64,000 nt of DNA from NCBI GenBank assembly GCA_002269645.1, contig NIVC01000185.1:1-64000 (forward strand), given 5' to 3'. The position numbers were made by a program, and so were the translations under genes. This DNA comes from Macrostomum lignano. Lineage: Eukaryota. Below, piece by piece: positions 7,530-62,329 of this stretch (its first letter is position 1; each line of letters begins with the position of its first letter). A model generated the notes under the pieces. It was given only the letters and a program-made list of their open reading frames with translations. It ran no database searches and was not told the origin of the DNA.

Positions 7530-7550
7530 TGACGTCAGTTGCTATAAATA
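7530..7550 (+). promoter_or_regulatory. CRE-like TGACGTCA followed by TATA-like TATAAATA
   Basis: TGACGTCA at 7530-7537 and TATAAATA at 7543-7550, preceded by G-rich boxes. No downstream gene was identified. Confidence 0.25.

Positions 7551-9611: not shown

Positions 9612-9698
<87 letters not shown>
9612..9698. repeat. (GA)n microsatellite
   Basis: Seen directly. Confidence 0.97.
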
Positions 9699-9701
<3 letters not shown>

Positions 9702-10197
9702 CGTTGTCATTCCTCATGCTCGAGCACGCACCTCTTATTGGCCCATAAATAAATCAGAACTATTAAAATGCTATCCTACCATAACTTACCTAGAAAGAGA
9801 GAGAGAGAAAATAGCGCAAAAAATTCGGATCTCCATGGCAACCGAAATTGAGCCCAAAAGTCGAGTCCTGAGCGGGTGAGCCGACCAAGATAATAATGTG
9901 AGCACAACTCAAACCTTGACGCCATGCACGCAGGCTGCCTGGCCGAGCCATATGGCAGAGATGAGATAGCGAATAACGATATGCCGAAGATCAAGCCTTA
10001 ATCTAAAGGACTGTGCTTGCGCCTGTGCTTTTTGTGTATTTAAACCGCTCGTAAAGTTGACTTGGCCAAGGCGAGTGAAGCGCGAGAGGTAAGGGCAGCT
10101 CAAAAAAGACATGTTTGCGCTACTCATTTAATTAAGCTTAGCGAATTCACCCCGAGTCGTGACCCAACTGACTTGACCTGCCAAGAAGAAATCAGCA

Positions 10198-13100
10198 ATG
10201 AGTTTCACGGACCGCGTCATCAGCCTGTGCGAGACTGCGCCAGAGGGGCGCAACGAGGAGGAGATCGAGTTCTTGGCCAGGTGGATCGAATCCAGCAGCT
10301 CATATTTTCGGAAGCTGCGCAACAAAGGTACGCTGGTTCCTGAGTTCGGTGTTGTTGCTAGCCCATTGCGTTCAAGCGCTTGCTCTCGACCTATTAAAGT
10401 GAATCTCAATGAGACAGAAGTGAATCTCAATGAGACAGAAGTGAATCTCAATGAGACAGAAGTGAATCTCAGTGAGACAGAAGCGAATCTCAATGAGACA
10501 GAAGTGAATCTCAGTGAGACAGAAGTGAATCTCAGTGAGACAGAAGTGAATCTCAATGAGACAGAAGTGAATCTCAGTGAGACAGAAGCGAATCTCAATG
10601 AGACAGAAGTGAATCTCAGTGAGACAGAAGTGAATCTCAATGAGACAGAAGTGAATCTCAATGAGACAGAAGCGAATCTCAATGAGACAGAAGTGAATCT
10701 CAGTGAGACAGAAGTGAATCTCAATGAGACAGAAGTGAATCTCAATGAGACAGAAGTGAATCTCAATGAGACAGAAGTGAATCTCAATGAGACAGACGTG
10801 ATTCTCAATGAGACAGAAGTGAATCTCAGTGAGACAGAAGTGAATCTCAGTGAGACAGAAGTGAATCTCAATGAGACAGAAGTGAATCTCAGTGAGACAG
10901 AAGTGAATCTCAATGAGACAGAAGTGAATCTCAATGAGACAGAAGTGAATCTCAATGAGACAGAAGTGAATCTCAATGAGACAGAAGTGAATCTCAATGA
11001 GACAGAAGTGAATCTCAATGAGACAGAAGTGAATCTCAATGAGACAGAAGCGAATCTCAATGAGACAGAAGTGAATCTCAGTGAGACAGAAGTGAATCTC
11101 AATGAGACAGAAGTGAATCTCAATGAGACAGAAGTGAATCTCAATGAGACAGAAGTGAATCTCAATGAGACAGAAGTGAATCTCAATGCGACAGAAGTGA
11201 ATCTCAATGAGACAGAAGTGAATCTCAGTGAGACAGAAGTGAATCTCAATGAGACAGAAGTGAATCTCAATGAGACAGAAGTGATTGTCAATGAGACAGA
11301 AGTGAATCTCAATGAGACAGAAGTGAATCTCAGTTTGACAGAAGTGAATCTCAATGAGACAGAAGTGATTCTCAATGAGACAGAAGTGATTCTCAATGAG
11401 ACAGAAGTGAATCTCAATGAGACAGAAGTGAATCTCAATGAGACAGAAGTGAATCTCAATGAGACAGAAGTGAATCTCAATGAGACAGACGTGAATCTCA
11501 ATGAGACAGAAGTGAATCTCAATGAGACAGAAGTGAATCTCAATGAGACAGAAGTGAATCTCAATGAGACAGAAGTGAATCTTAATGAGACAGAAGTGAA
11601 TCTCAATGAGACAGAAGTGATTCTCAATGAGACAGAAGTGAATCTCAGTGAGACAGAAGTGATTCTCAATGAGACAGAAGTGAATCTCAGTGAGACAGAA
11701 GTGAATCTCAATGAGACAGAAGTGAATCTCAATGAGACAGAAGTGAATCTCAATGAGACAAAAGTTAATCTCAATGAGACAGACGTGAATCTCAATGAGA
11801 CAAAAGTGAATCTCAACGAGACAGAAGTGAATCTTAATGAGACAGAAGTGAATCTCAATGAGACAGAAGTGAATCTCAGTGAGACAGAAGTGAATCTTAA
11901 TGAGACAGAAGTGAATCTTAATGAGACAGAAGTGAATCTTAATGAGACAGAAGTGATTCTCAATGAGACAGAAGTGAATCTCAGTCAGACAGAAGCGAAT
12001 CTCAATGAGACAGAAGTGAATCTCAGTGAGACAGAAGTGAATCTCAGTCAGACAGAAGCGAATCTCAATGAGACAGAAGTGAATCTTAATGACAGAAGTG
12101 AATCTCAATGAGTTGGAAACTAATGTCAATGGGAGGGAAACTAATCTCAATGAGAGGGAAACTAATCTCACTGAGAGGAAACTAATCTCACTGAGAGGAA
12201 ACTAATTTCAGTGCAGGGGGAGCCCACTTGTGTTTCAAGAAGTCTGAGAGTTCATGTACCGACTGTGCAGGCATTGTAAAGAAAAGAAATCAGTGCGAAA
12301 AGTTTGCATTGTCGGTTGAAATCTATCGCCATGTAGAAAAAATACAGAGAGGCTTTGGTCATGTGCCGCAACTCAATGGCGAAAGTCGACAAGCAGCCAG
12401 CCAGGAGGCAAGCAGTCATTCCGAGTTTGCTGACCCTTTGAGCACGAACTCGGATATGTACGCAGGCACACGCTCACACAGGGTGGGTGTACGGCGGTCC
12501 TGCCTTTTTATGCGCACTTTCAGCTAGGCATGAGTGCCCGACGTGACAAACTCCAGCTATTGCGCATCTGAAAGCTGCGTACGGCTGTTCAGTCCAAGGA
12601 CTGGGGGGTCGCCACACACACTCCCAATTACCCCAGCTAATGCTGGCACCCATTTTACAGCTGGGTTGAACTGAAGCAATGCAGAGTTGAGTGTCTTGCT
12701 CAAGGACACAATTGTTCCGAGTGGGTCAAGAATCGAACCCCCGACCTTTCAGTCGCGAGTCCGACGCTCTGACCACTAGTCTGCAACCCCTTTTGAAAAG
12801 TAACTTCAAACAAAATCGACTGTAGCGTCCTACTTACTTCAGTTGTTTATGAATCGAACTCGGGGTCTCGAACTCAATTTCAACCTCAGATACTAGAATA
12901 TGACTCGATTGGCCACTCAGGCATAAATACCTAGCAAAACAGCTTTCTACTTTCAGTTCAGTAGCAATGAAGAATACCTAAGCTATTTTATAAGAATAAA
13001 GGCAGCTGAGATGACTTTGATAAGTTCAGAAGCCCAAGCTTGCAGACGTAAACAGCTTGCTGATTGGTTCAACCATAATGTACATGATAAGCCACTGAAA

Positions 13101-16100
13101 TGTACATGGCAGATTTAGGCTCGAACAACCGGGGAAAGTAATAAAAATTGGGTGGCGGGGCAGGGGTAGAGGTTCTGTTTGGAGTTTGAATGTTTAAAAT
13201 GGGGGGTATAGCCAATAACTCGTAAATACGCAGCCTGTAATCCTTGTCTTTAAAAATACATTAAAATGCTTCAGTTTAACTTGCTACTGAACTGAAAGTA
13301 GCTTACACGCAAATGTGTTGAGTGGCCCATCTAGTTATTCTAGCATTTGTGATTTCAACTCGTTAAAAAATCTTTCCAGACGCTATTCGAGAAATCGTTC
13401 GCGACTGCCACCTGCAGCGTTTCCATGCCAACGAGCTGATCATTCGGCAGGGCGAGAAGGGCCACAGTTTCTACCTGGTGATCACCGGACGCGTCTCCGT
13501 GTATGTCAACAGCGATGCCGAGCAGGCCTCGGAGCCTGTCACTGCTGCCGACGCCTCGGCTTCAGGCGCAGGGGGTCCCAACCAAGCAGATCGGGACCCA
13601 GAGGCGGATGCGGACGATGCCGACGAGGATGTGGACTTGGCCTTCCTCGATGATGCTAATAAATTAGCCAGTCACGGCGAGGACGCAGAAGAGTTGCGCA
13701 GCCGCTTGCTAGGCGCTCACGTGCTGCAGATGGGCGAGGGCTACGCATTCGGCGAGATCGCCCTCACCAGTCCTAACAGCATCCGTAAGGCGTCCGTCAT
13801 CTGCGATGAGGATGTCGCAGTGCTAGTAATTCACCAGGTGTCATTTACTAGAACTCTTAAAGCCTACCAGCTGCAGGAGTACCAGATGATCGAGAGCTTC
13901 ATAGACACCTGCCCCGTGTTCGTCAACTGGAGACCGAAGCAGCGGCAGAGCCTGCGCAACAGCCTGCACAAGGAGGTTTACGGATACGGCGAGCCGATTG
14001 TGCAGCAGGGCCAGAAGAGCGGAGGCCTGTTCTTTATTGTTGGGTGAGGAAGCGAGTCCATCCACTTAATAGCTATAATATTGTAACATATGATAATTTT
14101 AGCTCGTATGGCTGCGGGCACCTGGCGCAAAGCCTTCGGTGACATGACATCGTCCCATTTTCGAGGAGGGCGTTTCAAAATCTACAAAATTCACAAACCC
14201 GAATTACACCCGGCTTCACGTACGGTATACTCAAACTTTAAATACCCGGATATTAATTTTGAAGCATCTCCACTTAGGAACTGACAGCTGCGAGGCAGTT
14301 GAATTTCACAGAGTAATCATGCCAGGTTTAGGATGCAGAAGTGTGCTTCAATAAATGGACGTGAGAAACGTGAAGTTGTCACGTGTTTCCAATGCGTGCA
14401 TGGTTAGCAAGTGTATGTATATCCTCGTATCCCAAGCATTGCTGCTGCAAGACAATGCTTGCTCCGGTTGCTTCCACCACCTCAGCTGAAATTTCCCGGC
14501 TCCCAAAAACTGCCTCTACTGTTGCTGATACCTGGCTGCATGATCCCCAGTAAGGGGCGGGGGTGGTGGAGGCCGCACTGCTGACCACCCGACCATTCAG
14601 ACACTGCCATGGGTTTGGGGTGAGCCTCCCAGTGCATAGAGAAAGCCTGCTCCAGTTATTATAACATTTTTGGCCCAGACTCCCGGGACCTCTTCATCGA
14701 TCCAAGCAGGCTCAGAGGCAAGGGGTGAAAGAAAGCCAAGAGCGAGAGAGGGGAGAGAGGACAAATAGTAGACCTGTTGAATTTTTTCGTCTACGGGGGC
14801 CTTGATAGACAACCGGTAGTTGCCATGACAATAAGTCCAAATTCAGGTGCATAAGCTGCAACTTTGCCTTCAAGTCAAGTTCAAGTCTCGTTAAAATATG
14901 CTTCTATGTAGGGAAACAAACGTAAAAATAAAACTGAGAAATTTGCTTCTAGGAGCGAACCAGAATAAAGCAAAGTGCTTTCATTTCCCATCTGTCAAGA
15001 GGATCCGTGAAGCTGCTCGCCGATCCAATCAGGTGGCCGGCGAGCATCCAGAAGTCAGAGAAGGACGAACAGTCTTCAGCGGCGCCGGCAGCGACTCCGG
15101 CTCCGGCTGCAGCGGCCGTGCAGGCGGGACTGCTTCGACATCGTCAGGGCTACCAGGCTGCTGAGCAGAGGCAGCGCAGTCGTCAGGTCGAGATCGCCTT
15201 GCTAGGCGAGGGCGAGATTCTCGGGCAAGTGGAGCTGCTCGCAAGTTTAGGCGAGAGTCTCACAACTGCGATAAGCGTCGACAACACCTACGGCTACTGG
15301 CTGAATCGCGCCAATTGTCGCCGACTGCTGTCTCGCAACCGCGGCGCTCTGGCCCAGCTGCGCCAAACGATCCTGCTCCGTCTGCAGTCTCGTTCACGTC
15401 GGGCCCCTCTGATGCGTCGACTCGGCCAGGATCCTCGAATTGCGGGCGGTGCCGCGGCGGCAGCGGCAGTAGCCGCGGCTGCAGCCGCAGCAACCGCGGC
15501 TTCCACAGATCCCGTGGCAGCAGGCGAGGAGCAGCGCCAGCTGCAGCAGCAACAACGCCAGGCTTGGCTGATGCACACGCGCAAGCAGCCGCCGCCTGGC
15601 GACCTGCTCTGGCAGCACATGCTGGCCATGTACGTGGAGGGCCGCAGCCAGCTGGGTCCGGCTCCGGCCGATGCGTCGCTCTACTATCGCCACCTGTGCC
15701 GGGTGAATGCGGAGCGCAGGCGGCATCTTCGAGAGCGATCGAGGCCGGCTAAACTGGTCGCGTCGCTTCAGAACGAAGATGAGGAAGAGGCCAGGGAGTC
15801 TGAGCTGGACAGCGGGCAGCCGCAGTTGAAGATGTGGCAGCAGCAGCAGCAGCAGCGGCGGCGCACGGTCCCTAGGAGTCGCCGGCTGTTGCAACGCGAA
15901 CTGGAAGCATCCGAGAAAGGAATAGTCTCGGGTCTGGGTGAGCGGCCTGATTTTGGTTTCCGTTGAAAAATGGAGCTCTGAGTGGATAAAATATTTAGAT
16001 AAGATTCCTGGAAGGCTGACTGATCAACAGTTAGATGCTTTAAAAATCTTTTTCGACTGGCTTTCATCGCGTAACCCGGATGGAGCAAAGACGATACACT

Positions 16101-18334
16101 AAATCAGCACTATTTTTTTCGCAGTTAAGTAGAACTCATACCCAACTGGCCCGCAACATTTCCTACTCTTCAAACAAAAAGAAATGTCTTCTTTGTCTCG
16201 TCTAAGATAATGGGTGAACTTGAAAAGAAACAACTGTAAAGGTATCAAAGCATCAGTGATATGCTGTTTGGCTAGCGTAGCTTGTATTTTTTGGCAATTA
16301 ATTTTGGTGAAAAATCGGACGCTCAATTCCACAATTCTACAAAATTGTCTCGATTTTTGCGAGCAAGTTTTTTAACTCGGCGATATTCGAGGCCGTCGAG
16401 ATATTTAACAGTTTCTTAGTAGAAACATAAAACGCAAGATTTTTTGGCATCTTTGGCTCGCAAATATCCTGAAGGGGTGGAGAATTTTGGCAGCGAGACG
16501 TTTGCCCCGCCGACGTTTGTACACCGTAGTAGCTGAAAATTCATCTGGTCGGAGTGATTGGTGCAGCTTTTTGTACGCGTCTATCAGATGTAGCTTGTAG
16601 ATTCGCTTGTACTTGTATTGTTGTGGATCCTCTTAATGCAAGTGGGAATGATTATTCGCAATTTCAGCAGGTATAGTATCGAATTTCGTCTGTCTCATGC
16701 AGTAAATAGTTTCGTTTCAAGCTTCTTTGATGATTAAATCTTTCTAGAATCGTTTGAATCTTACACTGAGTTTAAAATTAAGAACAATTTTAAGTCGGTG
16801 TCAAACTTAAATTATTTGAATATTTATTTGCACAAAAGTGACTGTGTACTGAAAATCGCATAAAACATACAGTAAAAAATCTTCAAGAGCAAAGTATTCT
16901 CGTGTTAAGGAAGCAAATTAAGGGAAGGCTAGGCTGGGCTAAACTTGAACTATTGAAGAATATTGTAGCTGGGAAATGTGCGGCGGGCAAACATGCGATG
17001 GGCGAACACCCAACGGGAAAGCATCCGACGGGCGAACACCCAACGGGCAAACATCCGATGGGCGAACACCCAACGGGAAAGCAATCGACGGGCGAACACC
17101 CAACGGGAAAGCATCCGACGGGCGAACACCCAACGGGAAAGCATCCGACGGGCGAACACCCAACGGGCAAACATCCGATGGGCGAACACCCAACGGGAAA
17201 GCAATCGACGGGCGAACACCCAACGGGAAAGCATCCGACGGGCGAACACCCAACGGGAAAGCAATCGACGGGCGAACACCCAACGGGAAAGCATCCGACG
17301 GGCGAACACCCAACGGGAAAGCATCCGACGGGCGAACACCCAACGGGAAAGCATCCGCCGGGCAAAACATCTACATTTTTTAGAGAAACAAAAAAATTAA
17401 TTCCAAATTTTAAATTTTAAGATTGAATACTTGTCCTTGCCTCCACTCAGAATATCGACAGCCTGCTGCTGCTTTCGCTGCCAACGAGGCCAACAGAGCG
17501 GCCTTCCGCCCGACTGATGCTGGCAAAGGGCCTGGTGACTCAGCAGGCGCCGCCAATGCACCTCCGAGTGCCGCCTGGACAACCTCGAACTCTGGCGTGC
17601 CCCGACTGCTGACGGATTTCGAATTGTCCAAAGCGCACCTGCGCCTGATTGAGCGTCGCATTGAAGCCTTCTGCACGGATACAGCAGGTGTTGTTTATCG
17701 TAGACCCGGCGTCGGCGCGGTTGGCGGCGGCATTGGCGGCAACGTCAAAGGTCAAAAGCCGCATGTGGAGCCTCTTCTGCGACTGCCCGTAAGAAATGGA
17801 CAGTGCGTCTGATTGGACTGGGAACTTTTACTTTCGATAGCGGAAAACTCGAATTGAGTTGAGGGGAAGATACTGAGTATCACGGATTGAGTTGAGGGGA
17901 GATACTGAGTATCACGGATTGAGTTGAGGGGAGATACTGAGTATCACAGATTGAGTAGAGGGGAGATACTGAGTATCACGGTTTGAGTTGAGGGATAATT
18001 TTAAGTTAATTTCTATAAATTTATTGCACCAACTGAATTCCATTCTACCCGCCTGCTTCGAATCCGAAAGGACGTGGAGATACAGAAGCCGCGTCTCCGA
18101 GGCAGTCGCGTTCTCGTTAAAACCAAGCAGTGCCCCGCCAGCAACGCCAATGGCCAGATGGTCCTGGGGCACAGTCACGTGACCAACCACCTGGTGCAGA
18201 GTCTGCGACTGACCCTGGTCTTCCACGACGCATGGGCCGCGCTCGCCGACTCCGTCGACCTCGTCTACTCGAGGGAATCTGCCGAGCCACAGGTCTCAAC
18301 GATTGAAGTTTATAACTTTTTAGCAAAAGCTTAA
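10198..18334 (+). CDS. Protein with tandem cyclic-nucleotide-binding domains (CNBD-type), 5 exons: 10198-10327, 13380-14043, 15000-15937, 17451-17788, 18071-18334; about 777 aa
   Basis: All four introns are GT-AG with matching phases (1, 2, 1, 0), and the summed exon length of 2334 is divisible by 3. cNMP motifs: [22 protein letters not shown]...FGEIAL...RKASV and [20 protein letters not shown]...[13 protein letters not shown]...AISV. The 3' end of the last exon is uncertain (possible donor at ~18292). Confidence 0.82.
10398..12110. repeat. Intronic tandem repeat, 21-bp unit GTGAATCTCAATGAGACAGAA, about 80 copies
   Basis: Seen directly. It lies between the donor at 10328 and the acceptor at 13379 and explains the long NLNETEV, FTSVSLR and IHFCLIE ORFs. 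Confidence 0.97.
12554..12790. mobile_element. SINE-like dispersed repeat, copy 1
   Basis: About 230 bp, highly similar to 40829-41075: CAGCTATTGCGC...TTTTACAGCTGGG...GTCTTGCTCAAGGACACAA...GAATCGAACCCCCGACC (an inverted B-box-like end). Confidence 0.65.
12947..13301. mobile_element. MITE-like element with perfect 21-bp inverted repeats
   Basis: CTACTTTCAGTTCAGTAGCAA (12947-12967) is the exact reverse complement of TTGCTACTGAACTGAAAGTAG (13281-13301). A third copy of the arm lies at ~40571-40588. Confidence 0.5.
16990..17365. repeat. Intronic tandem repeat, 30-bp unit GGGCGAACACCCAACGGGAAAGCATCCGAC
   Basis: Seen directly. All six frames are open because the unit has no stop codon. Confidence 0.95.
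17853..17993. repeat. Intronic tandem repeat, ~32-bp unit ATTGAGTTGAGGGGAGATACTGAGTATCACGG, about 4 copies
   Basis: Seen directly. Confidence 0.9.
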
Positions 18335-18404
18335 AGAACAAACGTTACTGTGACGAAGTGTCTGCAATAATTGTCTCAGTCTATTGTTGAAAGCTACTTC
18401 AGCG

Positions 18405-19316
<912 letters not shown>

Positions 19317-19909
19317 GGTGAAAAATTATGTGCTTATTCAGATAAATTTAATATTAACGTTAATCGATAGTTTACGTGATAAAGACATAAAAATATAGTA
19401 TTAATACTTTATTAATAAAAAGTTCTGTAAAAATTTGCTTTCATTTCTTAGGTAAAGTCACGTTAGGGACGGTAATAAAGTAAGTACCGAACTACGGTCT
19501 GTTAAAGTTGACGCGTGAGGCATTTCTTTTCTGTTTTATTAAGTATTGGTAGGTTCTTATAAACAATTAGTCTAGTTACCAGTTTAATGGTATTCGGAAA
19601 CTAGTACAAGTTTAAATACGTTATATAGCTCTAAAACCTCTCGATATCTTTGGTTGTTAGAGGATCGTTGAGTTTGCGTGACATATAGTTTCCGCAAGCA
19701 GTGTCCGTGTTTTTTTAGGGAAACTGTTTTGAGATAACACTTATTAGTTGAGGAGTTTTGAAATCGCGGAGCAAGAATAGTTTTTTAAATCATGTGACGA
19801 AAACTAACGGACGACAACGACATTGACACCGACATATTTTCAGGGTGTATAAAGAGAACTAAGATGGATATCATCTCTTTATCCTTACGACATAAGGGGG
19901 ACTGCGACG

Positions 19910-20980
19910 AGTATAAGGGACTTCATTGGGTATAAGGGACTTCGATGGGCATTATGGGACTTCGATGGGCATTATGGGACTTCGATGGGAATAAGGGGAC
20001 TTCGATGGGTATAAAGGGATTTCGATGGGTATAAGGTGACTGTGATGGGTATAATGGGACTTCGATGGGTATCATGGGACTTTGATGGGCATAATGGGAC
20101 TTCGATAGGTATAAAGGGACTTCGATGGGCATTATGGGACTTCGATGGGCATTATGGGACTTCGATAGGTATAGTGGGACTTCGATGGGCATTATGGGAC
20201 TTCGATGGGCATTATGGGATTTCGATGGGTATCATGGGACTTCGATGGGCATTATGGGATTTCCATGGTATCATGGGACTTCGATGGGCATTATGGGATT
20301 TCGATGGGTATCATGGGACTTCGATGGGTATAATGAGACTTCGATGGGAACAATGGGGTTTCGATGGGTATAATGGGACTTCGATGGGTATAATGGGGCA
20401 TCGATAGGTATAATGGGACTTCGATGGGTATAAAGGGACTTCGATGGGTATAATGGGACTTCGATGGGTATAATGGGGCATCGATAGGTATAATGGGACT
20501 TCGATAGGTATAATGGGACTTCGATGGGTATAAAGGGACTTCGATGGGTATAATGGGACTTCGATGGGTATAATGGGGCATCGATAGGTATAATGGGACT
20601 TCGATAGGTATAATGGGACTTCGATGGGTATAAAGGGACTTCGATGGGTATAATGGGACTTCGATGGGTATAATGGGACTTCGATGGGTATAATGGACTT
20701 CGATGGGTATAATGGGACTTCGATGGGTATAATGGGACTTCGATGGGTATAATGGACTTCGATGGGTATAAAGGGACTTCGATGGGTATAAAGGGACTTC
20801 GATGGGTATAATGGGACTTCGATGGGTATAATGGGACTTCGATGGGTATAAAGGGACATCGATGGGTATAATGGGACTTCGATGGGTATAATGGGACTTC
20901 GATGGGTATAATGGGACTTCGATGGGTATAATGGGACTTCGATGGGTATAATGGGACTTCGATGGGTATAATGGGACTTG
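19910..20980. repeat. Tandem repeat, 20-bp unit GGGTATAATGGGACTTCGAT, inside the mirror block (complement reading CCCATATTACCCTGAAGCTA)
   Basis: Seen directly. Confidence 0.95.
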
Positions 20981-22032
20981 TTAAAGCGTAGCTCCATAAT
21001 CTTGAAATTCGAATCTATTCAAAGACGATTCAACTATAGGCTAGGGTCTGGTCTCCTAAGTCTCGTACGTACCGGACTCGAACGTTAGCATGTCAATTTT
21101 GTCCATTGATTCCGAAGAGAGCGGGAAGTTCAACTCGTCCCCCCACCGACTGACCGGTATCGTTGCCTGCACGGGCTGTCCGAAACTGAGTTGTTTCGTT
21201 GTTTGTTACGGGCAACGGCTCAGGAGTCGTCGGGCCGGTCGGTGGGGTAGCGAGAGGAGGAGGTTCACAACGGTTTTACTCGGCTTATTCGTCAAACTCA
21301 GGGAAATTCATGGTGGGGGACGAGACGCGACTGTGACCGTCAGCGAGGCGTAAGAGCATAAAAGATTAGTTTATAAGTCGGACGACCTTCAAGATTATTA
21401 ACTTACAGACTCAACGTCGCAGGCCGTCGCCTGTTTGGGAAGGATGAGTGGAATGCGACACAAAAAATTAAACGTCGGTACGACGAGAGGTCGAAGGGCA
21501 CAGCGAAGTACTGCTTCCTCCTTCTCTATCCCGTCTTTTAAAACCTTCCTTTATCTCCTCCAGGACGTCCGACTGCCTCCGTCTTCTTGTTACTTGTCCA
21601 ACGAATCACTCTCCCCACCGACAGGCCAGAGGGCGCCGGAAGTTTTGAGGTAGCGGGGGGGAAAACGCTGCACGTCGTTGGCGTCTCAACCGACCGGACG
21701 TCGTCGAGGCGGACAGCGAGGGTATCTCAGGACCCTCGAGGGAGGAGTTTCTGTTCCCCTGCGACCCTGCTACCCCTCTCAAAAAGGGGAAATTGGGGGA
21801 GGGCGGTACGGGCAGAGAGACGACGTACCCCTTCCTTTCGTTAAACGGACTCGTCTCACCTTAAGAGCCGAACCCCTTGCCACCGAACGACCACCCTGCG
21901 CCCCAACCGGATAAAGTTCAGCCACATCCGTCGGCGAGGGGTCAATTCAGTGCCTCTACACTCGTCTTTGGGCATCACTAAGCTATCGGGGAGAGCGAGT
22001 GCGAACAAAGAGTTAAGCCGTTAGCTCTTCCG

Positions 22033-22971
22033 TACCGCCTGTTCTTTTGACTGCGACGTTTCTTCTGGTTTCTTCTCCTGTCGTTCTTTTATCTCGGCGG
22101 CGGCGGTCACGTTTTTCTCCTTCTACTTCTTCTGCTGCTCCTGCTTCTCCTGCTTCTTCTTCTTCTTCTCGTCTTTTGCCTGCGATTCTTCGGGCGACGA
22201 CTGGTCCTACGACTACTCCTGCTACTCCTACTCCTTCTGCTGCTTCTACTTCTTCTCTTTGGCCGGCGACGGTGGCGGCGATTTTTCCTCCTTCTGCTTC
22301 TACTTCTTCTTCTACTTCTTCTACTCCTCCTACTTCGACTCGGTCGGTTCGGTCGCCGTCGCCGTCGACTACTGCTCCTACTCCTACTCCTACTCCTACT
22401 TCTACTACTTCTCCTTCTTCTCTTTCGACTCGGCCGGTTCGGTCGCCGTCGACTCCTACTACTACTTCTACTCCTACTTCTTCTACTTCTGCTTCTGCTT
22501 CTTCTCGGCCGATTCGGTCGTCGTCGTCGCCGACTCCTACTCCTGCTCCTACTTCTGCTTCTGCTTCTGCTTCTTCTTCTTCTTGTTCGCAGGCCCCACG
22601 GTCGTTTTCAGCTGCTCCTTCTACTTCTGCTTCTTCTTCTGCTCCTACTTCTTCTTCTTCTTCTTCTTCTCCTTCTTCTCTTCTTTCGCCTTCTCCTACC
22701 TCTGCTTCTACTCCTGCTTCTTCTTCTCCTTCTGCTACCGTACCTGTGTGACCTGTTTTACCGCCGCCTGTACTTCTTCACCGATCGCCTCAGGCCTCAC
22801 CTCGACCTGCGTCTCCTTTGCCTCCCGTACAACCGGCCTAGGTACCTGCAACTTTTCAAGTACCTTCCGTACAGCCTGCTTCTGTTTCGCAAGCATTTGG
22901 TCCTCTAGCTCCTATACTTCAGCTACAGCAACGTCGTCTAGTACCTGGCCGAACACAGACCCCGCCGCACT
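22033..22971. other. Hidden ORF readable only as the complement in left-to-right order: 312-aa highly acidic protein
   Basis: The complement of 22033-22035 (tac) is ATG. It translates without a stop as MADKKTDAAKKTKEEDSKKIEPPPPVQKEEDEEDDE...AEPAKPAAAA(D/E)n...GMDTLDKMAADMKKWLAESGVELDAEETEGMLAGSMDVEKFMEGMSDEDKAFVNQEIEDMKSMSLQQIMDRLVSGAA, with TGA at 22969-22971, followed by T-rich UTR-like sequence. Confidence 0.88.
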
Positions 22972-24359
22972 TGCGCCGATGACTCCAGACTTGCTACAAC
23001 CAGAAAGTCGGGCTGACCTCACATCGATATGTACACAAAAATATCCCTTACGTTTCGATTAAAATCCATCTACTTTACATCCAAATCAACCCTTTGCTTA
23101 ACAGCAAATAATCTACCCACAGTTCAAAACTAATTTAAACTAAAACAATTTTCCAGACAAACAGTCTAAACATAAAATCGCTGCGCAAAGTTGATTATGA
23201 AAATGCTCCTTATAAAAGAAAATTATGCTTCAATACATCTTCTAAATTGGACGAAAACAACCCCCCTTCCATAAACGTATTATCAAGCATATTCTATATA
23301 TCTGTTTGCTAAAGGGCCGTAATTGAGCGACAATATAACTTATATTGGCTTATTTTAGGGACTTACCTTGATTATGGGACCTTTAGTGTTGTGTCATGAG
23401 CATTCTAGGGTTCCAAACCGAGTCTGTCTTAAATCATCAATTCAGGTTTTATTTATTCGTCTTGACAGAGCGTGAGATAAAAGAACTAGGGCATAAAAGA
23501 TCTACTTCTTTTGTTACATGACAACTTAGCTTTGAAGCTACAGCTTTAAAAGAGTACAGCCATATCGCATAGAAATACGGAATATTCGAGGAGACTTGGA
23601 CTGTGACGACTTCCTGAGTTCACGCACAACTTTTGTAGAAAAAAACAAACATAGACACGTACATGATGCACGTGATTTAATAAGCGTGCGCGTGCGTAAA
23701 ATTGTTATCTACACTCACATTTTAAGTCTAAGTAATAAATTATATCGTTTTAAACATACTTAAAGACTAGTTACTTTGTTAACAACTGCTACAAAAAATA
23801 CGGAAATCAAAAAAAATAATTTGGCTAATAATATGCTCGCATGTGTGCACGTTTCCATACGAACGTGAACATGTGATCATAGAGCCTTTTAGCATAAACG
23901 GCAACTCTTTTCACGTACGTACCCGTTCCTTAAAAGCCACAAAGTAATTTTCACGTTAATCGTTAAAAATCTCGCCGGGAACAGTCTGTCTAATCTGATC
24001 TGATCTGACAGATCTCAGGGTACTGGTAAACGTTAATATATATTAAGAATGTACAAATTTTTGTCCTAAAAAAATAAAATAATCTCCGTCCCCCAACACA
24101 CGTGGGACCGCGTGAAATTCGCTGTAACCGTGCGTTGGCCGCTCTCCGTAATGACGGGTAAGGCGGCTGAGGGGACTCGTCCGTATGTTCGCGCGCCTAT
24201 GCATGCGTCCGTGTGTGAGTGTGTCCTCACATGTCGCCGCGATTGAAATATAATAACAATCCGTACATGTGAAGTGACGCGGAACCCCCAACCGGGAGTT
24301 CCGGCAATTAACGTGCTCGTCTCGGTTCGGCTCTAAGGTTAAGTCGGGGTTTAATTACA

Positions 24360-24430
24360 CTGACGTGAACCTTAGCTCGGACCCAGCGACCGTGTGGTCT
24401 CGTCGACGCGATGGCGACCCGATGCCGGGG
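24360..24430. mobile_element. tRNA-derived (Ala-like) SINE head in mirror orientation
   Basis: Reading 24430 to 24370 backwards without complementing gives GGGGCCGTAGCCCAGCGGTAGCGCAGCTGCTCTGGTGTGCCAGCGACCCAGGCTCGATTCC. The A box TAGCCCAGCGG fits TRGCNNAGYGG. The B box GGCTCGATTCC has one mismatch to GGTTCGANNCC. Confidence 0.65.
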
Positions 24431-25824
24431 TTGTCCTAAAACTAACAAAATTAAGAATATTATGATATGGAAGATTAACGCGAGATAAACCACTTTAGGC
24501 ACAACTTAAACCACGCTTAAGCGGTCGTCCGACTGCACAGTCGGTCAATCTCAAACCGCTATCTGAATCGTCTTTCGTCTTTCGTACGTTAAACCTTTAT
24601 CGACGCAAGTCAAACCAGACGGGTTCTTGTCGAGCATGTACATGTTCTCTTTAACTCTGTACCGTGAATAGCACTACTCTCTCCAGTCTCGTCGTAGTGC
24701 CGTCGCTTCATAGACGTCACCCACTAGGTGTGTGTCTACATGCAAGTCGCGACGGATTTAGACCTGCTTTAAGTGAAAATTATGTACATGTACGTCCACA
24801 TTGTTTAGTATAATTGTAACTATGACTGTGGCTAAATGACACGAAGCTGACAAAACAAATTACACCAAAAGTACAAACTCTCGCAAATACTGTCACGTAA
24901 CGAGCACCACTTTCATATACCTTTCGAAACTAAAAGGCAGAAAACTCAAATCGGGTACGTTTATCTTGCGCGTCAAATATGGTTTAACCAACGACCAAAA
25001 GACGTATACAGATACCGTTTAGTTAAAGAACTACCGAAGCCTGAAAAGTTCGGACATCGAAGCCTGGAGTCTTGAGTCTTTACTTAGAGATTCTCGAGAC
25101 CGGAGAGCGAGGACAGTCTACCAGTCAGGGCTCCACCGATCTAAAACCCGCTCGTCGTTCCAGGATATCGATTCTCTTCTGTCGCTCTCTGTTCGACCCT
25201 CTTAAACTTTCCATCTTCTTTAATCGATTGGCCGTCCGATTGAATTGGGCGACGGTGGTCAGGCACGCGGGGCCGAGTGGTTTGGCCTCGAAAGCTTTAG
25301 CCTGAAAGCTGATCTTCCCGTGACGTGAATGGACGGTAGATATCACTCACAGAAAATCGACAGATAGAGCTTCAGTATCGGCTTATCTTCCCTGTGACGA
25401 CCCTGATTTCAAGCGTAACCGGTACGAGGGACTGAGAGAGGACTTCTGCAGGGGGTTCTTGTGGTGGCGAGCTTTCAAGCACCGCCCAATGTACTACCTC
25501 ATTACCAAATTCCCAGAAGTACATGTACAAGTACACGTAACTGCACGCTTTTGGCACTAAATGTGTTAACACGTCGACAGATAGCGATAATGTAGGTGTA
25601 TTGTCACCTTTGGAGATCTTTAGACTAACATTTAACTCGTTTTAGCCGCTTAGCTGCCTGAGACTGCACGAAGGCACCAGTCTGGCCCTTATAGTTTGCA
25701 TGTTTATCATGATTGCTTAGATCGACTGGTTGACTGGGACCTGTGTCGCTTCCGGTCCACTGTGACCTCTGCCCCTAGATCTAGTCGCTCATCTCAGTTG
25801 GCATTGCGAAAAAGAAAGAAAACG

Positions 25825-26794
25825 TTAAGTATTTAACTTGTTGTTAAACGGGGATGGGAAGCTGGGCTTACCGCGGATCAGCCCTAAAGGGGGCTCTGCC
25901 GCTGCGGGGCACTTTCCAAGGGCACGGGGAATTCCGTGAACCCGAGATACCCTCCTCGGAAGTCCGAGGACCAATTTAGTTGGGCCCTGACTAAGGCCAG
26001 GGGAGGCGAGGGACTTCAAACCTATGGTACAAGGCACCGCCAACCCAAAAAGTGGAATCAGGGACGGTGCTAGGACCGAGTCCACCCAGGCTACCCCCAG
26101 CAGACAAGTCCTCGGGAGTGCGCTTCAGAAATAGAATTAAAAATCGAAAAGTTTTGGATATGCTACTTAAAGCGGTCCGAGAGCGGGGATACCCCGAAGT
26201 CAACGGAAATGGCTTATCAATTGGAGTGAGTCTGGAAGGCTTGTTTCCGAGTGGGAGACTCCAGGCGGGAAGACCGACCGCCTCTATTGCTACCAACCCA
26301 AGGGTATCGCAAAGGGATAAAACCGCGCTGGGATGCCAGCCCAGAAAAAAAGAAAGGCAGAAGGGAGGAGCACCTGAACCCTACAAGCAGGCGGGAGAGA
26401 GACCTGCAACCCGGGGCTCAGCCTCAGGGCTGGCATCAACTGGGCTCTACCGTACACTTTTGTGAATGGTCGTCTGTCTTTGCTGCAGGGCGGGTGCGAC
26501 CGGGGGCTCAAGTCCCGTTCTAGCCACACTGCAGTCCAGATCTCCAACTCAATCCAGGTACACCACCCCTAACCCAGGGCCGATGGCCAAATAATTGGAA
26601 TGTACGAAAAAAAGAATTGGGTTATTTTTAGAACAGGCACAGCCCCTCCGGGGCGAACCCTTAGTTAATTGGGCTAGCCGAAGCCAGGCCAATCGGATTG
26701 CGCACAACCCTTAGACAAGCTACCAGAGAGGCAGCCAGGGTAAAAACAGTCGGAGACCGTCTTTATTATTAATAAATTATTAAGTATTTAACTT
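25825..26794. mobile_element. ~940-bp GC-rich insertion flanked by a 15-bp direct repeat (possible target-site duplication), inside the mirror block
   Basis: TTAAGTATTTAACTT is identical at 25825-25839 and 26780-26794. In the complement reading the insert ends in an AAT-rich tail (GAAATAATAATTATTT) and carries AATAAA. Confidence 0.4.
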
Positions 26795-27146
26795 ACAGGT
26801 TAAACTTTCTAACTTAATTCACAATTCTAAACGCCTTAGATTGAGTCGGTGCGAATTGCTACTTTTAGTATTATACGGAACTTCTGCCTTGAGTTTGGCA
26901 CACAAAAACAAGTAAGCAAAAGTGCAAATCCTATCAGACTACCTAGGAAGGGGTCAGACAAGGGGCGCACCCAGTTAAGCAGGTCAAGAAAGTCTCTCAC
27001 CCTACCAATCAGAGGACCTAACCGCCGGTAGCCAAGGATTAAACAGAGACCGAAACGCTCGGGCGGGATGCTGCTGCTGATTTTAGTTGATGAGCGCCGC
27101 AGTTGTTCTCCACTGGCCGGTTGCTGTCGCTACTACTACTACTGCT

Positions 27147-27412
<266 letters not shown>

Positions 27413-28604
27413 ATAGTTTGGCTCAGGCAAATAGCTTGCTGTTTGGCCAGTATAAGCCAATGTTTAATAATAATTAAAAAATGAAGGGACTTTTTTGATG
27501 TGTAAGTATATGCATGTGTTACGATCGTTTTGTAAAAAATGTAAAAAAAATTTTTGAAAGAGTGCCAAACTTTTTTCTACGAATTATTCGAACTGTATAT
27601 CCTTTTAATAAGTTTCGAAATCCGAACTATCTTTGTGTATTTGTATCTTTGATTAGTTCGAGCGACCAGAGATCCCAACTTATGACTCGAAAAATATCAA
27701 AATCGTCATGCAATTGAAGTTATAACAGCCGCAGACTAATAATTAATGCGGCGATCGTATATTGATCCATAGTAGTTCAGACCGATAAGATGTGCTTGAC
27801 ACGAGGAGAATCGTATATTAAGCGTATATTAGTAGTGATAGCAACTCAACGCAGCAGTTATAGCTCTTAGAATTCCTGGTTTTTGCTACCGTACGTTTTG
27901 CATGGTGTTTCTAATAGACTCCGGGGTGTGCGGGAGAAGTGTCTATATTCATTGAACACCGTCATATCTGGAGAGAGCGTAGTATTACATTTATATTTAT
28001 GTACATGCACAATCAATTTTTAAGAATGCATATATCCGCGGCTGATACTTTAATCAATTTAGTCAATCTATTTTTTCTAGGATCCACGCCTAAGAGAAAA
28101 CAATATGCAATAAAAATGAAATGAAGTTCTCTTTGTTGCGCTTTTTTTATGGTCTGAAATGGTAAACTTACACATGCTGTTAAAATTAAGCTAAAATTCA
28201 AATTCAGACCGGACGCCAGAATCGTAATCTAAATATACTAAATCTTCCATATACTAAAAATGATGTTTGTTTGTACCAAATCGATTATTTGCTTGCTATA
28301 GTTTTGCTGTAGCTCCGCTGTATATGCAACAAACAAGCCTTATATATTATAGATGCATTGAAGCTTTTTTAGGGTTTTTTAGTAAGGAATAGATATTTTG
28401 TAAAGGACAATAAGATATTATACTGCCTTCGCTATTTAATTTTTATTTTGTCCCCTTATTCACTCAATATCATTAGGGCCTGGCCTACCCATCCCAGTTA
28501 GTCTATAGGGCGATCTTCCAGTTTGTTTCACGATATTATTCGCTTGTTTATTTTAGTTTGAAATTGTGCGTCAATGTAGTGAAACATCTGAAGACGATAC
28601 CTAC

Positions 28605-39523: not shown

Positions 39524-42500
39524 TCAAAGCCGGGTCTCTTGGCCGCCAGCCGGAAATCCGTCGGGCAACGGCAGTGCTGAGTACTGGCTGCGCCGCCGCC
39601 TGTCGGCCCGGCCGCCGCCGACTCCGCACAGGCAGCAAATGCACAGCGACATCACTATTGTGAGCAGCTGCGGGCGCGGTCATTGGGGGGCGGGAAATCT
39701 GTCAGTACTTAAATTGTTACACTTTATTATACGCTATTAGATGTAGCAAAATCCTGATTTTTAAAAGCTTTTAAAGCAATCCAAATTAAAAGGGTGAATG
39801 TATGATAACAGTTGATTTCTGTCGCCTCAAAGACAGGGCTCAAAGACCCCCGTGCAAACTAAATCATGTAAACTAACTAAACCTTAAATATTCGTACTTT
39901 AGGGCAAAAGTCGTTTTATTAGCCCTCTTACACCTCCCCCAGCTGAACCCTCCGACCGCTTCTTGCCGCACAAAACCTCTACCCTGCCCGCCTCCATTTA
40001 ATTGCCTTTCTCGGTGTTCTATATCTAAAGCTGCTATGTACATTAAAAAGACTCATTTATTGGCCCTCTTAACTCCCCCCGGTTGAATTCCCCGACCGCG
40101 TCTTGCCGCACGAAACCTCTACCCCCCCGCTCGCCTCCATTTAATTGCCTTTCTCGGTGTTCTATATCTAAAGCTACTATGTACATTAAAAAGATTCATT
40201 TATTGACCCTCTTAACTCCCCCCGGTTGACTTCCCCGACCGCGTCTTGCCGCACGAAACGTCTACCCCCCCCCGCCCGCCTCCATTTAATTGCCTTTCTC
40301 GGTGTTCTATATCTAAAGCTGCTATGTACATTAAAAAGACTCATTTATTGGCCCTCTTAACTCCCCCCGGTTGACTTCCCCGACCGCGTCTTGCCGCACG
40401 AAACGTCTACCCCCCCGCCGCCCGCCTCCATTTAATTGCCTTTCTCGGTGTTTCAGCCAAATGCTGACTGCCATGTACATTATCAGTGGCGCTGGCAAAT
40501 GTACATTATGCCTTATAAGTCACTCTCAACTACCTTTCGTGTCGTGAAATAGCTTACGCATGCTTCCTTACTACTGAACTGAAAGTAGAAAAACTGTCAA
40601 GAAAACTGATAAAAAATCCACAGCCACAATTATTATGGTTCTGAGAACTGGCAGAGACTATTCAAATATGCTTTGCCAATTAGCCTACTTATTATATAGT
40701 AGCGTGAAATGTTGCTCATTATGTGATACCAGTTCTAATTAAAGTCGTCCCTGGATATGGCTAGTAATATTATAAATTAATTACAATCTGCCCTATTTGG
40801 GCCAGATGTGCAACCGACAGCTCAGCCGCAGCTATTGCGCGGCGCATCTGAAGGCTGCGTACGGCTGTTCAGTCCAAGGACTGGGGGGGGGGGTCGCCAC
40901 ACCCTCAATTACCCCCCATCTAATGCTGGCACCCATTTTACAGCTGGGTGAACTGAAGCAATGCAGAGTTAGGCGTCTTGCTCAAGGACACAAATTGTTC
41001 CGAGTGGGTCACGAATCAAACCCTCGACCTCGTCGTGAGTCTGACGCTCTAAGTCAAACCACTAGGCTACAACCCGCCCTTACTTGGCTATCAAACACAA
41101 CGCTAAAACATTTTACATTACTAATGTAAAAGTACTAGGATAAGTTAAGGATAAGTAAGGATAAGTAGATAAGAATCTACTAGGATAAGTAGAATAATCG
41201 GAAAACTAGCGAATTAATTCACCTCTAGCGCTGTCAGGCCAACAGAAACGAATAGGCCGATGCGGATCGCGCGCCAGGTAGTTTCCATGACAACGGAACG
41301 GCAGCCCTGGAATAAAGCGATTGAGGATAGCCATGTCGCATCTGAGCTTATATACTATTTAAGCTCGCGTCTACAACCCCATTTGAAGTTTAGCAATTGC
41401 CACTGGTTTTGGATAAAAAATCTACTATTAGCAACAAGTGGCGATTCACACCATGAGGGCCAACCCCCAAGGCACAGAGTGTACATGGCCTTACGATTAG
41501 AAAGTCAGGGGGCTGCTGTAAACCCTGTGGGAGCGAGTGCGCGCCTGCGTACAGCATTGGCGCGCTTGTGTGCCCAGGAGTCAGATGAGGAATAGGCAGA
41601 ATCAGCGCCAGTTGTGGGACAATGTCATCTACAGCACCTTAAGCTAATGCTCACCCTATCATAGGCCAGCTCAAACGGCAGCGAGTACGGCTTGGGCTCG
41701 CACTCTGTAGGGCCCAGCTTCTCTGAGTTGCAGCAGGACCAAGGAATCTGCAGGGTATCGCCGCCTGCGGCCCCTCTGTAGTCCCTGTAGGACTGACCGC
41801 CGCAGCAGTAAAACTGAAAAATAAGAGATTTTCTTGATTGTCAAACTTTTGACCCCGTGTGCAGAAATCAGAATAAGAAACAAGAAATAACAGAACCAAC
41901 CCGCTTGTGAAGGATGTCCATTAGGCCAGCATTGCCATCATTACTATACTGATAGTTGCGCTGCCAGGTATCGAAGGACTCGCCAATCGTCTCTTTAACC
42001 TGAATTTGTATTTTTAGTATGATAGAAATAAGCTACTTACACTGTTCAGTAGTATTTTCTGTGTGTTAAATTAAATAAAAACATTTGTCCAGAAAAAATA
42101 TGACCCGTAGAAGGGAGTTTTCTAACGTCAGATACTAGCATCCCCTTTGACCCTTGGCATCTCAGCAACTTCACCCGTGAGCATTGGCATCAGCAACTTC
42201 ACCCGTGAGCATTGGCATCGCAGTAACTCCAGCCGTGAGCCTTGGCATCAGCAACTTCACCCGTGAGCCTTGGCATCTCAGCAACTCCAGCCGTGAGCAT
42301 TGGCATCTCAGCAACTCCACCTGTGAGCATTGGCATCTCAGCAACTCCACCCGTGAGCCTTGGCATCTCAGCAACTCCACCTGTGAGCCTTGGCATCTCA
42401 GCAACTCCAGCCGTGAGCATTGGCATCTCAGCAACTCCACCTGTGAGCATTGGCATCTCAGCAACTCCAGCCGTGAGCATTGGCATCTCAGCAACTCCAC

Positions 42501-59639: not shown

Positions 59640-62329
59640 TAAATTGGCGAATATTTATAAAGAGCACCAGATCCCGTCTGGTCTGTTTGGCTCGGCCAGT
59701 GCGCAGTGTGTAATGCGACTCGACTAAAACGGACAGACAGACAGCTGCTGCGCAAGACAGATGGCGGACGGTTGCAGACGGCTGGGGCTTCAAAGCTCTT
59801 TTTGATCTGGAGGGTTTGCCCCCGCTATTCCCCGTCCTGCAGGCGGAAATGCAGACAGGGGAGAGAGCTAGAATGATGGGGGCAGATGCAACGCCAGATG
59901 GTAGTTGCAGACGCGGCTGTGGGTTGTGCTTGGGCCATGATGATTTCGAGTTCTAGAATCTGGAATGAGAAACATCCCCTGTTCTAATACTAGGGCTAGG
60001 GAGATTGGAGCAAAAAATCTGCCTTACGATTTTTGACGTACATGCCTGAAGATTAGAAAGTCAGGGCTTTCTAACGTGCCCTATTATCATTATTACATTA
60101 TAAGGTGGCATGGGTTCTTCGCGTGTATTTAGAAAGTATTAATTACTATCAACTGAACAAACACTAAGTCAAACTTAGTGAAATTCCATGTTCTAGCTAT
60201 ATCGATCTCCTTGGCCGGCTGGGCCGCCGTTGTGTGCGAGACCGAGCGTGTGTGCGTGTGCAGTGTAGCCGATGCCAGACCCCTCCGTGGCTCTCCCGCA
60301 CCACCCTTGCACCCACCCCGGCCCGCTTTGGGTCTTCTTTCCAGTTTCCCGGAGCCAACTGGAGGCGGCAGCAGCAAACTGGGGCGATGCAGAGACAGCT
60401 GCAGCTACAGAGAGGAGAGAGCGGTACACTGCGGGTCAGGAAAGCAGTGCTTGCGCTTTGGTTCCGCTGGCCTGTTGGCGGGCTGAGCGCAGGCAGATAC
60501 GCAATACTGCACGATAGGCATTATAAAGATTCGGCCGCTGTCTGGCATGGAATCTGCACTGTCATTTAGCTGCTAGTTGCTCCGCTGTCTCCTCTCCCTC
60601 TTCCCCTTTCCTCTCTCAGCGATCATCGGCATTAACGAGCCTGGCAGAGCGGCAATGGTCTCTCAGTTCGACCAGCCAGCTTCATCAGCACTCTATTAAC
60701 GCAGCTATCTATAGCTTAAGCTACCAGAATAGAACTAGTTGATCGCTAGATTAGAATCCGACAAGCTAAATTTTTTTCTAAATTGGTAAGTTGTATTTTT
60801 TAACATCTTGGTTAAAAATATTGTCAAGCCAACTTGGTTTTGAGGCTGAATTTATTTTCCTTGTTACAGTTACGAAAGCAACACGAAATTTCATCGCTTT
60901 TAGACCAGAGATCGAAGGCTGATTTTGAGATAGAGGGGGAGAGGAGAGGGGAAGGAGAGGATAGAGGAAGGGAGATGAGTCGAGAGGGGAGAGAGACAGA
61001 AGGGGAGAGATGAGAAGAGACACAAACCTTGAGCGGGCCGGATTGCTATAATTCTGAAGTTTCAAAAGACCCGAGGGCCGGATAGAGTGACGTCGCGGGC
61101 TGCATGTTGCCCGCGGGCCGGAGTTCGCTTCAGACTATAGATATCAAAATGTTTTGATGCAGAGAAACTGAATACTTGGCAGTCAGACTTATTGTATGAA
61201 GATGAGGATTTGGAGAGAGATATTACTTCAGATTCTGGTTCAGAATCACCTAGTATAAGGTCAAGAGGAGGGTTCACTAGATCAGACAAGCAGGTGCAGG
61301 TTACGCCAGTTGACTGTTTTGCCAAAGCAATCCATTAGCATTTCTCCTGCAGTGCCACCCCTGGAGCCTTCAATCGTTTAATGTATACAAACAGGTGAAA
61401 CCTGACCCAGGGTTGAAGATACACGGAAAGAAACCCTGCTGCATAGACAGAAAAAAATCTTTGGCCTTAGACACGGGATGCGCTGTGGAGGGATGCGCGC
61501 ACCAAATTTGAAAAGATTGGACGGGTCAGCGAAAATGATGCGCTTAAGCAGTGTCGGTACTGGAGTAACTAGGCCGAATCTTTGAAACCTGGTGTTTGTG
61601 TACGAAAATTAGCCTTGAGGCTTGTGGTCTGCATGGGGGATTCACACCCGTGGCCGTGAGGGCCAACCCCCAAGGCACAGTTTAATTACTTGTAGAAAGT
61701 CAGGACTACTTCTTTAATAAGTTTCTAAATTCTTTTGGAACTCGAAATAAGCATATTGGATAAGAGCAGTGTGGAGCAGAACACCCTGGAATCGTTCATA
61801 ACTTTTTAATTGTTTCTTTAACCCGATGGCTAAACTCTGAGGCTAGTAATAAACAGGGTGGAAAGCTAGTCCATCAAGTGACCATAATTTAAGCTCGATA
61901 AGAACTAGGTGCCCCCCCCACGCATTTAACAGCACCTCCTCTCTACTCGCGCCTATTACGTGAGAATTTGCTTTTAAAACGCAGTTCTCGTTTCTATAGC
62001 TTTGGCTTAAATAGTGACTCACGCTATCACAAAGCCTTTTGCTCTCGCTCTTTTCCTCCGCCCCCCTCTGTTTACTTCTTCAATACTCGACCTACTTGTG
62101 CGCCCAGTCACATGCCAACTAGCGAGCCCGGTCAGCTCGGAAAGATAAAGCAGCACTTTGAAACACGCAGTGACGCAACAGTTGGCTGCGTGTTGCCCAG
62201 GCCATTCTTAAGCTTGAAACCTGTCAGTCAGCTCACTGCAGTGATATAATAATTAGCTCGTATTTACTGTGCTCACAAGCCAGCCACTCGTTGAGGTAGG
62301 ATAATCTAAGGCTAAATTCCTTCCTAACC

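What the first reader, a model, noticed from the sequence alone, without database searches (positions are those of the whole stretch)
24195..24299. Internal controls: repeats found normally elsewhere in the window occur here as complement or mirror copies
Seen in the sequence: the complement of 24195-24226 (CGGATACGTACGCAGGCACACACTCACACAGG) matches 12451-12482 at 30/32. Positions 24281-24299 (GGAACCCCCAACCGGGAGT) are the exact mirror image of TGAGGGCCAACCCCCAAGG at 41454-41472 and 61657-61675. These matches do not depend on any database and show that the block is ordinary genomic DNA of the same organism in a non-biological orientation.
Basis: seen in the sequence. Interest (0 to 1): 0.75.

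Follow-up and report, generated by a model that had tools for sequence, protein, structure and literature searches.

The report
Complemented-but-not-reversed block: a computational artefact
A 7,220-base stretch of this flatworm (Macrostomum lignano) genome window has had every base swapped for its complement without being reversed, which no biological process can do, so the odd "mirror" and "complement" repeat matches are a data artefact or planted control and not biology.

Summary
They are two halves of one copy (24181-24304) of a ~125-bp interspersed repeat, not two independent repeats. The core interpretation, ordinary DNA of the same organism in a non-biological orientation, is correct. 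A native Macrostomum lignano contig (GCA_002269645.1, NIVC01004342.1) is collinear with the window. Window 361-18206 matches it as is. Window 18207-25426 matches only after base-wise complementation in the same left-to-right order. Window 25427-28206 matches as is again. Both junctions are exact to the base (45/45 on each side). So the block is 18207-25426 (7,220 bp), not 19320-27060, and it is complemented in place, not flipped end to end. Restoring it recovers a 312-aa ORF 100% identical to the native gene, completes the last exon of a cNMP-binding gene cut at 18206/18207, and returns the repeat copy to ordinary orientations. Dinucleotide and Markov orientation statistics flip only inside this block and independently placed its edges at about 18.2 and 25.4 kb. 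This is not a biological feature. Interest is low. Whether the deposited source record carries the block could not be tested.

The parts
18207..25426 (.). The anomalous block: 7,220 bp of genuine M. lignano sequence in which every base has been replaced by its complement while the order is unchanged (equivalently, the opposite strand written backwards).
   Evidence: the complemented, non-reversed window 18207-25426 aligns on the plus strand to native L001 16590-23868 (93-98% identity), while as-is alignments stop at 18206 and resume at 25427; both junctions are base-exact, 45/45 as is outside the block and 45/45 after complementation inside it; reversal-sensitive dinucleotide and Markov statistics flip only here.
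24181..24304 (.). The single copy of a ~125-bp interspersed repeat inside the block.
   Evidence: After restoration it matches the 41k and 61k copies as a reverse complement and the 12k copy directly.
41451..41574 (+). Normal copy of the same repeat family, the longest one.
61652..61681 (+). Normal partial copy of the same repeat family.
12451..12511 (-). Normal copy of the same repeat family, inverted relative to the 41k copy.
22033..22971 (.). Gene for a 312-aa highly acidic protein. It can be read only from the complement of the + strand taken left to right, so it is a + strand gene in the native genome.
   Evidence: ORF appears only after un-reversing. (M. lignano homologue P0001, E=2e-22). 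(tblastn E=7e-44 against the reversed window, 0.004 against the window as given). (100% identical to the gene annotated at L001 20476-21414).
18041..18274 (+). Last coding exon of the cyclic-nucleotide-binding-domain gene. The left junction at 18206/18207 cuts through it, leaving the last ~23 codons inside the block.
   Evidence: the C-terminus of P0002 aligns to 18041-18205 in the window as given and to 18041-18274 after restoration; the native gene ends 74 nt beyond the junction.
18405..19316 (.). (GACA)n microsatellite as given, which is (CTGT)n in the native sequence. It lies inside the block.

Best explanation
Window 18207-25426 is authentic Macrostomum lignano genomic DNA that was altered in silico: each base was replaced by its Watson-Crick complement without reversing the order. 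The result is neither strand of the real locus. Repeats that lie on the same strand as a normal copy then appear as 'complement' copies, and repeats that lie inverted appear as 'mirror' copies. Shown here: the transformation, its exact extent, and its effects (genes destroyed, k-mer asymmetries flipped). Inferred: the origin. The cut points are arbitrary (one lies inside a coding exon), the block has the same identity to the native contig as its flanks, and no sequencing or assembly chemistry yields such a string. So it is most likely a deliberately planted control or decoy, or otherwise a scripting error (complement used instead of reverse-complement), introduced after assembly. It has no biological mechanism or function.
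For:: three collinear alignments to native contig NIVC01004342.1, as is (361-18206), complement-only (18207-25426) and as is (25427-28206), with abutting coordinates on both sequences; base-exact junctions, and a restored ORF 100% identical to the native 312-aa gene. P0001 hits only the transformed window (E=7e-44 against 0.004); the cNMP gene's last exon continues across 18206/18207 only after restoration; the repeat copy returns to normal modes; the remaining abnormal hits are simple sequence. CG>GC and GT+AC>TG+CA only in this region; the counts swap back on restoration (CG/GC 403/250 becomes 250/403); 0 of 74 cross-validated normal 1-kb windows are negative (mean +28, sd 10 per kb), while all windows from 18.5 to 25.5 kb are negative; model-only best estimates of the edges, 18205-18217 (orders 1-4) and 25432-25446 (orders 3-4), agree with the homology-defined 18207 and 25426.
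Against: The native comparator is not the window's own source record. It is 96-99.5% identical and its tandem-array lengths differ, so it is a paralogue, haplotype or another assembly. I therefore could not show directly that the source record lacks the complemented block. Nothing in the data argues for a biological origin.
Confidence: 0.97

Rival explanations
1. The segment was reversed end to end without complementing (flipped in place), as the reader's 'mirror' wording and my first tests suggested.
For: Reversal and complementation give the same k-mer statistics and the same mirror/complement repeat matches, so internal evidence alone cannot tell them apart.
Against:: the complemented window aligns to the native contig on the plus strand in the same left-to-right order and abuts the as-is flanks at both ends. 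An end-to-end reversal would put L001 23868 next to window 18206; the acidic-protein gene lies downstream of the cNMP gene and in the same direction on the native contig, as in the complement reading.
Confidence: 0.01
2. A genuine chromosomal inversion or an inverted duplication.
For: None beyond the presence of an orientation anomaly.
Against: An inversion produces the reverse complement. One search shows no minus-strand alignment of the as-given block to the native contig. Reverse-complement-symmetric Markov models would not flip for an inversion, yet they do flip. Genes inside an inversion remain readable, and here they are not.
Confidence: 0
3. The mirror and complement matches are chance, or ordinary mirror-symmetric simple sequence.
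For: Many raw mirror k-mer hits in the window do come from microsatellites such as (GACA)n, which are their own mirror image. The 16-nt complement match 5574-5589 vs 26739-26754 is at chance level (about 0.5 expected) and lies outside the true block.
Against: The quoted matches are complex sequence with E=2e-6 to 4e-9, and they belong to a four-copy repeat family that becomes collinear after one transformation.
Confidence: 0
4. The complemented block is present in a deposited public assembly (a bug in an assembly, polishing or scaffolding script) and was not added by the scan as a control.
For: The window's own source record could not be retrieved, so this is not excluded. The window differs from the one native contig found.
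Against: The cut points are arbitrary, with one inside an exon and neither at a gap or contig join. Mainstream assemblers do not emit complement-only strings (my own knowledge). Gene models from two independent public annotations (P0001 from UniProt; the L001 gene) read the native orientation.
Confidence: 0.05

Closest known systems
Decoy or negative-control sequence made by reversing or complementing real sequence (as in reversed-sequence decoys in proteomics and genomics benchmarking)
   Same: Base composition, repeat content and complexity are preserved. All directional signals (genes, splice sites, CpG/TpG asymmetry) are destroyed. Boundaries are arbitrary and base-exact.
   Different: Nothing here states the intent. 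It could equally be a complement-versus-reverse-complement scripting slip.
Chromosomal inversion
   Same: A bounded block whose orientation differs from that of its flanks.
   Different: An inversion yields the reverse complement and keeps genes readable. This block is complement-only and unreadable.
Biological mirror repeats (H-DNA / triplex-forming homopurine-homopyrimidine mirror repeats)
   Same: The matches have mirror symmetry.
   Different: Biological mirror repeats are local and adjacent, and usually purine- or pyrimidine-rich. Here the partners are 17-37 kb apart, are of mixed sequence, and are copies of a dispersed repeat.

Membership tests
In-silico complement-only (non-reversed) sequence artefact | The block aligns to the native sequence only after base-wise complementation, in unchanged order | tested here: met
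   complemented window 18207-25426 matches L001 16590-23868 on the plus strand, and the as-is window has no alignment there.
In-silico complement-only (non-reversed) sequence artefact | Base-exact junctions with unaltered flanks, collinear on the native sequence | tested here: met
   45/45 matches on each side of 18206/18207 and of 25426/25427, with adjacent native coordinates (16589/16590 and 23868/23869).
In-silico complement-only (non-reversed) sequence artefact | Strand-symmetric but reversal-sensitive k-mer statistics flip inside the block only | tested here: met
In-silico complement-only (non-reversed) sequence artefact | Coding sequences become readable only after the transformation is undone | tested here: met
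In-silico complement-only (non-reversed) sequence artefact | Absent from the raw reads and from the source record | not testable with these tools
   Neither the source record nor reads were reachable.
Chromosomal inversion | The block equals the reverse complement of the native sequence | tested here: not met
   no minus-strand alignment of the as-given block to L001.
End-to-end reversed (mirror) segment | The order of the block is inverted relative to the flanks on the native sequence | tested here: not met
   the order is unchanged.
Interspersed repeat family (the ~125-bp element) | Several dispersed copies in both orientations with collinear similarity | tested here: met
   four copies (12.45, 24.2, 41.45 and 61.65 kb).
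Interspersed repeat family (the ~125-bp element) | Terminal inverted repeats or target-site duplications that would class it as a MITE or SINE | not tested
   Not pursued, as it is peripheral to the finding.

The most novel reading that the evidence does not exclude
The complement-only block sits in a deposited public assembly of the neopolyploid M. lignano genome. That would reveal a class of silent assembly or curation error that breaks gene models (here two genes) and that standard QC does not flag, because composition and repeat content look normal.
Probability: 0.05. Interest if true: 0.25.

Novelty: not a real feature. Interest (0 to 1): 0.04.

Why it matters
Biologically it does not matter, because the block has no function and cannot exist in a cell. 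Practically it shows three things. A sequence-only reader can detect non-biological orientation from repeat symmetry. That symmetry evidence alone misplaced both edges by more than 1 kb, because a mirror-symmetric microsatellite hid one of them. Simple reversal-sensitive statistics (CG vs GC, TG+CA vs GT+AC, and Markov forward-versus-mirror log-odds) locate such blocks to within a few tens of bases without any database. If such a block ever sits in a public record, it would silently destroy gene models.

Tried and rejected
(1) A raw 14-mer dot plot and a leave-out order-4 Markov scan that included tandem repeats were both swamped by microsatellites and minisatellites. I replaced them with repeat-masked versions.
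(2) I suspected that 'RERGY' at ~26.19 kb (as-is + strand) was the last exon of P0001 and so crossed the right junction. This was rejected: 'RERGY' maps at 22967-22981 inside the block, directly after VSGAA with a frameshift.
(3) I tried to use the directional interruption GAATCACA in the (GACA)n array to orient the array against a similar array at 48.6 kb. There is no related array there, so the test was uninformative.
(4) A Pfam scan of all ORFs >=50 aa in both the as-is and reversed readings of 19.3-27.15 kb found nothing, as did Pfam on the 327-aa acidic ORF.
(5) A Rfam scan of the window found no family.
A 1.1k-aa version worked, gave the flank control hit, and gave no hit for 25.4-27.15 kb in either reading.
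(7) The look-up of encoding contigs for P0001 and for the Ras ORF found nothing on record. So the window's own source record was never reached.
(8) The 16-nt complement match 5574-5589 vs 26739-26754 first looked like support for a block reaching 27 kb. It is at chance level and lies in normal DNA.

Full report
OBSERVATION. The complement of 24195-24226 equals 12451-12482 at 30/32. The mirror image of 24281-24299 equals 41454-41472 and 61657-61675, and the exact match is in fact 20 nt (24280-24299). Raw k-mer dot plots are dominated by microsatellites that are their own mirror image. After a low-complexity filter, five exact mirror/complement matches of >=16 nt remain. Two are the 20-nt mirror matches at 24280-24299. 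One is a 16-nt complement match (5574-5589 vs 26739-26754) that is at chance level and lies outside the true block. Two are sequences that are their own mirror image. Gapped BLAST of the window against its reversed version extends the mirror match to 24181-24302 vs 41451-41574 (128 columns, E=3.9e-9) and the complement match to 24195-24252 vs 12451-12511 (E=2.7e-6). Between normal parts of the window the only significant abnormal-mode hit is a trinucleotide-repeat coincidence (1494-1533 vs 27372-27411). A multiple alignment shows that the two matches are the two ends of one copy of a ~125-bp interspersed repeat. The 41k and 61k copies are direct and the 12k copy is inverted, so a single transformation of the block explains both matches.

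WHAT THE WINDOW IS. Outside the block the window encodes ordinary eukaryotic genes in the normal way: a kinesin motor (495-2417), a cNMP-binding protein, a Mos1-type mariner transposase and a Ras-family GTPase. The window is very rich in mini- and microsatellites. Protein hits identify the organism as the flatworm Macrostomum lignano. Its Mlig_3_7 assembly and its neopolyploid genome are described in PMC5730564 and PMC10733133 (titles and abstracts seen).

DATABASE-FREE EVIDENCE FOR A NON-BIOLOGICAL ORIENTATION. Reversal, or equivalently complementation, swaps CG with GC and TG/CA with GT/AC. Almost everywhere in the window GC>CG and TG+CA>GT+AC, and both inequalities flip across roughly 18-26 kb. 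A repeat-masked, strand-symmetric Markov model trained on the rest of the window gives a forward-versus-mirror log-odds that is positive in all 74 cross-validated normal 1-kb windows (mean +28, sd 10 per kb) and negative in every window from 18.5 to 25.5 kb. Window 26001-27000 scores +22, which is typical of normal DNA. They put the left edge at 18205-18217 (orders 1-4), before the (GACA)n array.

GENE-LEVEL EVIDENCE. Un-reversing the region produces a 327-codon open frame for a highly acidic protein. Its non-repetitive C-terminus hits an M. lignano protein (P0001, 81% identity, E=2e-22). In a controlled tblastn, P0001 matches the reversed window at E=7e-44 with segments that are 100% identical (window 22247-22968), but matches the window as given only at noise level (E=0.004). 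P0001 is a frame-hopping gene model that lies wholly inside 22247-22981.

THE DECISIVE COMPARISON. A flank ORF used as a positive control hit M. lignano BOX15_Mlig021539g2 (P0002, E=1.5e-96). P0002 led to a native genomic locus, L001 = GCA_002269645.1 NIVC01004342.1:8056-34718. BLASTN shows three pieces. Window 361-18206 matches L001 1-16589 as is (96-99%). Window 18207-25426 matches L001 16590-23868 only when the window is complemented without reversal, on the plus strand and in the same order (93-98%). Window 25427-28206 matches L001 23869-26663 as is (99.5%). At base level both junctions are exact: 45/45 positions match as is outside the block and 45/45 match after complementation inside it. 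The block is therefore 18207-25426 (7,220 bp) and is a complement in place, not an end-to-end reversal and not an inversion. After restoration:
- The ORF 22033-22971 is 100% identical to the 312-aa gene annotated at L001 20476-21414.
- The C-terminus of the cNMP protein, which stops aligning at 18205 in the window as given, continues to 18274. The left cut therefore lies inside a coding exon.
- The dinucleotide counts swap back.
- The repeat copy matches its relatives in ordinary modes: reverse complement to the 41k and 61k copies and direct to the 12k copy.
- The only abnormal-mode hits left are simple sequence.

INTERPRETATION. No polymerase, recombinase or sequencing chemistry produces a complement-only string (established knowledge: DNA strands are antiparallel, and inversions give reverse complements). 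The cut points are arbitrary, and the block is as similar to the native contig as its flanks are. It is therefore a computational artefact, most probably a planted control or decoy, or otherwise a complement-for-reverse-complement scripting error. It has no biological mechanism. Its block coordinates (19320-27060) are wrong at both ends: the nearly mirror-symmetric (GACA)n array at 18405-19316 hid the true left edge, and 25427-27060 is normal DNA. Its two 'controls' are one repeat copy.

LIMITS. L001 is not the window's own source, since it is 96-99.5% identical and its tandem arrays differ in length. It is a paralogue, haplotype or other assembly of this neopolyploid genome. I could not reach the source record, so whether the deposited record carries the block is untested. 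I put that at about 5%.

VERDICT. This is not a real biological feature, and interest is very low.

Noticed in passing
window 58390-59639: A complete-looking Mos1/mariner-type DNA transposon of 1,250 bp. It has ~30-bp terminal inverted repeats (TTGGGyTGTTAGGAAAGTTCTGTCCGTTTT, 29/30) flanked by TA on both sides. The transposase is split into two overlapping ORFs, 58451-58909 (HTH_48) and 58891-59565 (Transposase_1/DDE_3), so it probably carries a frameshift and is inactive.
   Followed up: partly
window 22247-22981 (complement reading) vs P0001: UniProt A0A1I8F9I8, named 'CHM2A protein', is a 138-aa gene model whose segments hop between three reading frames of what is really a single 312-aa acidic-protein ORF. 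Both the model and its name look wrong. The 312-aa protein has no Pfam domain.
   Followed up: partly
window 10397-12112 vs L001 10194-10644; also other arrays: The 21-bp minisatellite has ~82 copies in the window but only about 450 bp (~21 copies) in the native comparator contig. Overall identity is 96-99.5%. The window is therefore a different haplotype, subgenome copy or assembly of the same locus in this neopolyploid genome.
   Followed up: partly
whole window: The tandem-repeat load is very high: 48 TRF rows, many 20-30-bp minisatellites of 0.3-1.7 kb, and about 28% of bases lie in 12-mers that recur in the window.
   Followed up: no
window 40842-41050 vs L001 10990-11197 (equivalent to window ~12.5-12.8 kb): The ~125-bp repeat seems to be part of a longer dispersed element, since the 12.2-12.8 kb and 40.6-41.6 kb regions share several hundred bases in normal-mode hits. 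I did not examine its class (MITE, SINE or other).
   Followed up: no
window 27152-27417: A (TAG)n array of ~89 copies lies just outside the block. Its mirror image, (GAT)n, resembles Asp-rich coding sequence in the kinesin gene (1494-1533), which gives a spurious 'mirror' hit between two normal regions.
   Followed up: yes
window 12.5-18.3 kb: A multi-exon cyclic-nucleotide-binding-domain gene, orthologous or paralogous to BOX15_Mlig021539g2 (759 aa). Its large exons are visible as ORFs 13478-14047 and 15007-15966, and its last exon ends at about 18274.
   Followed up: partly
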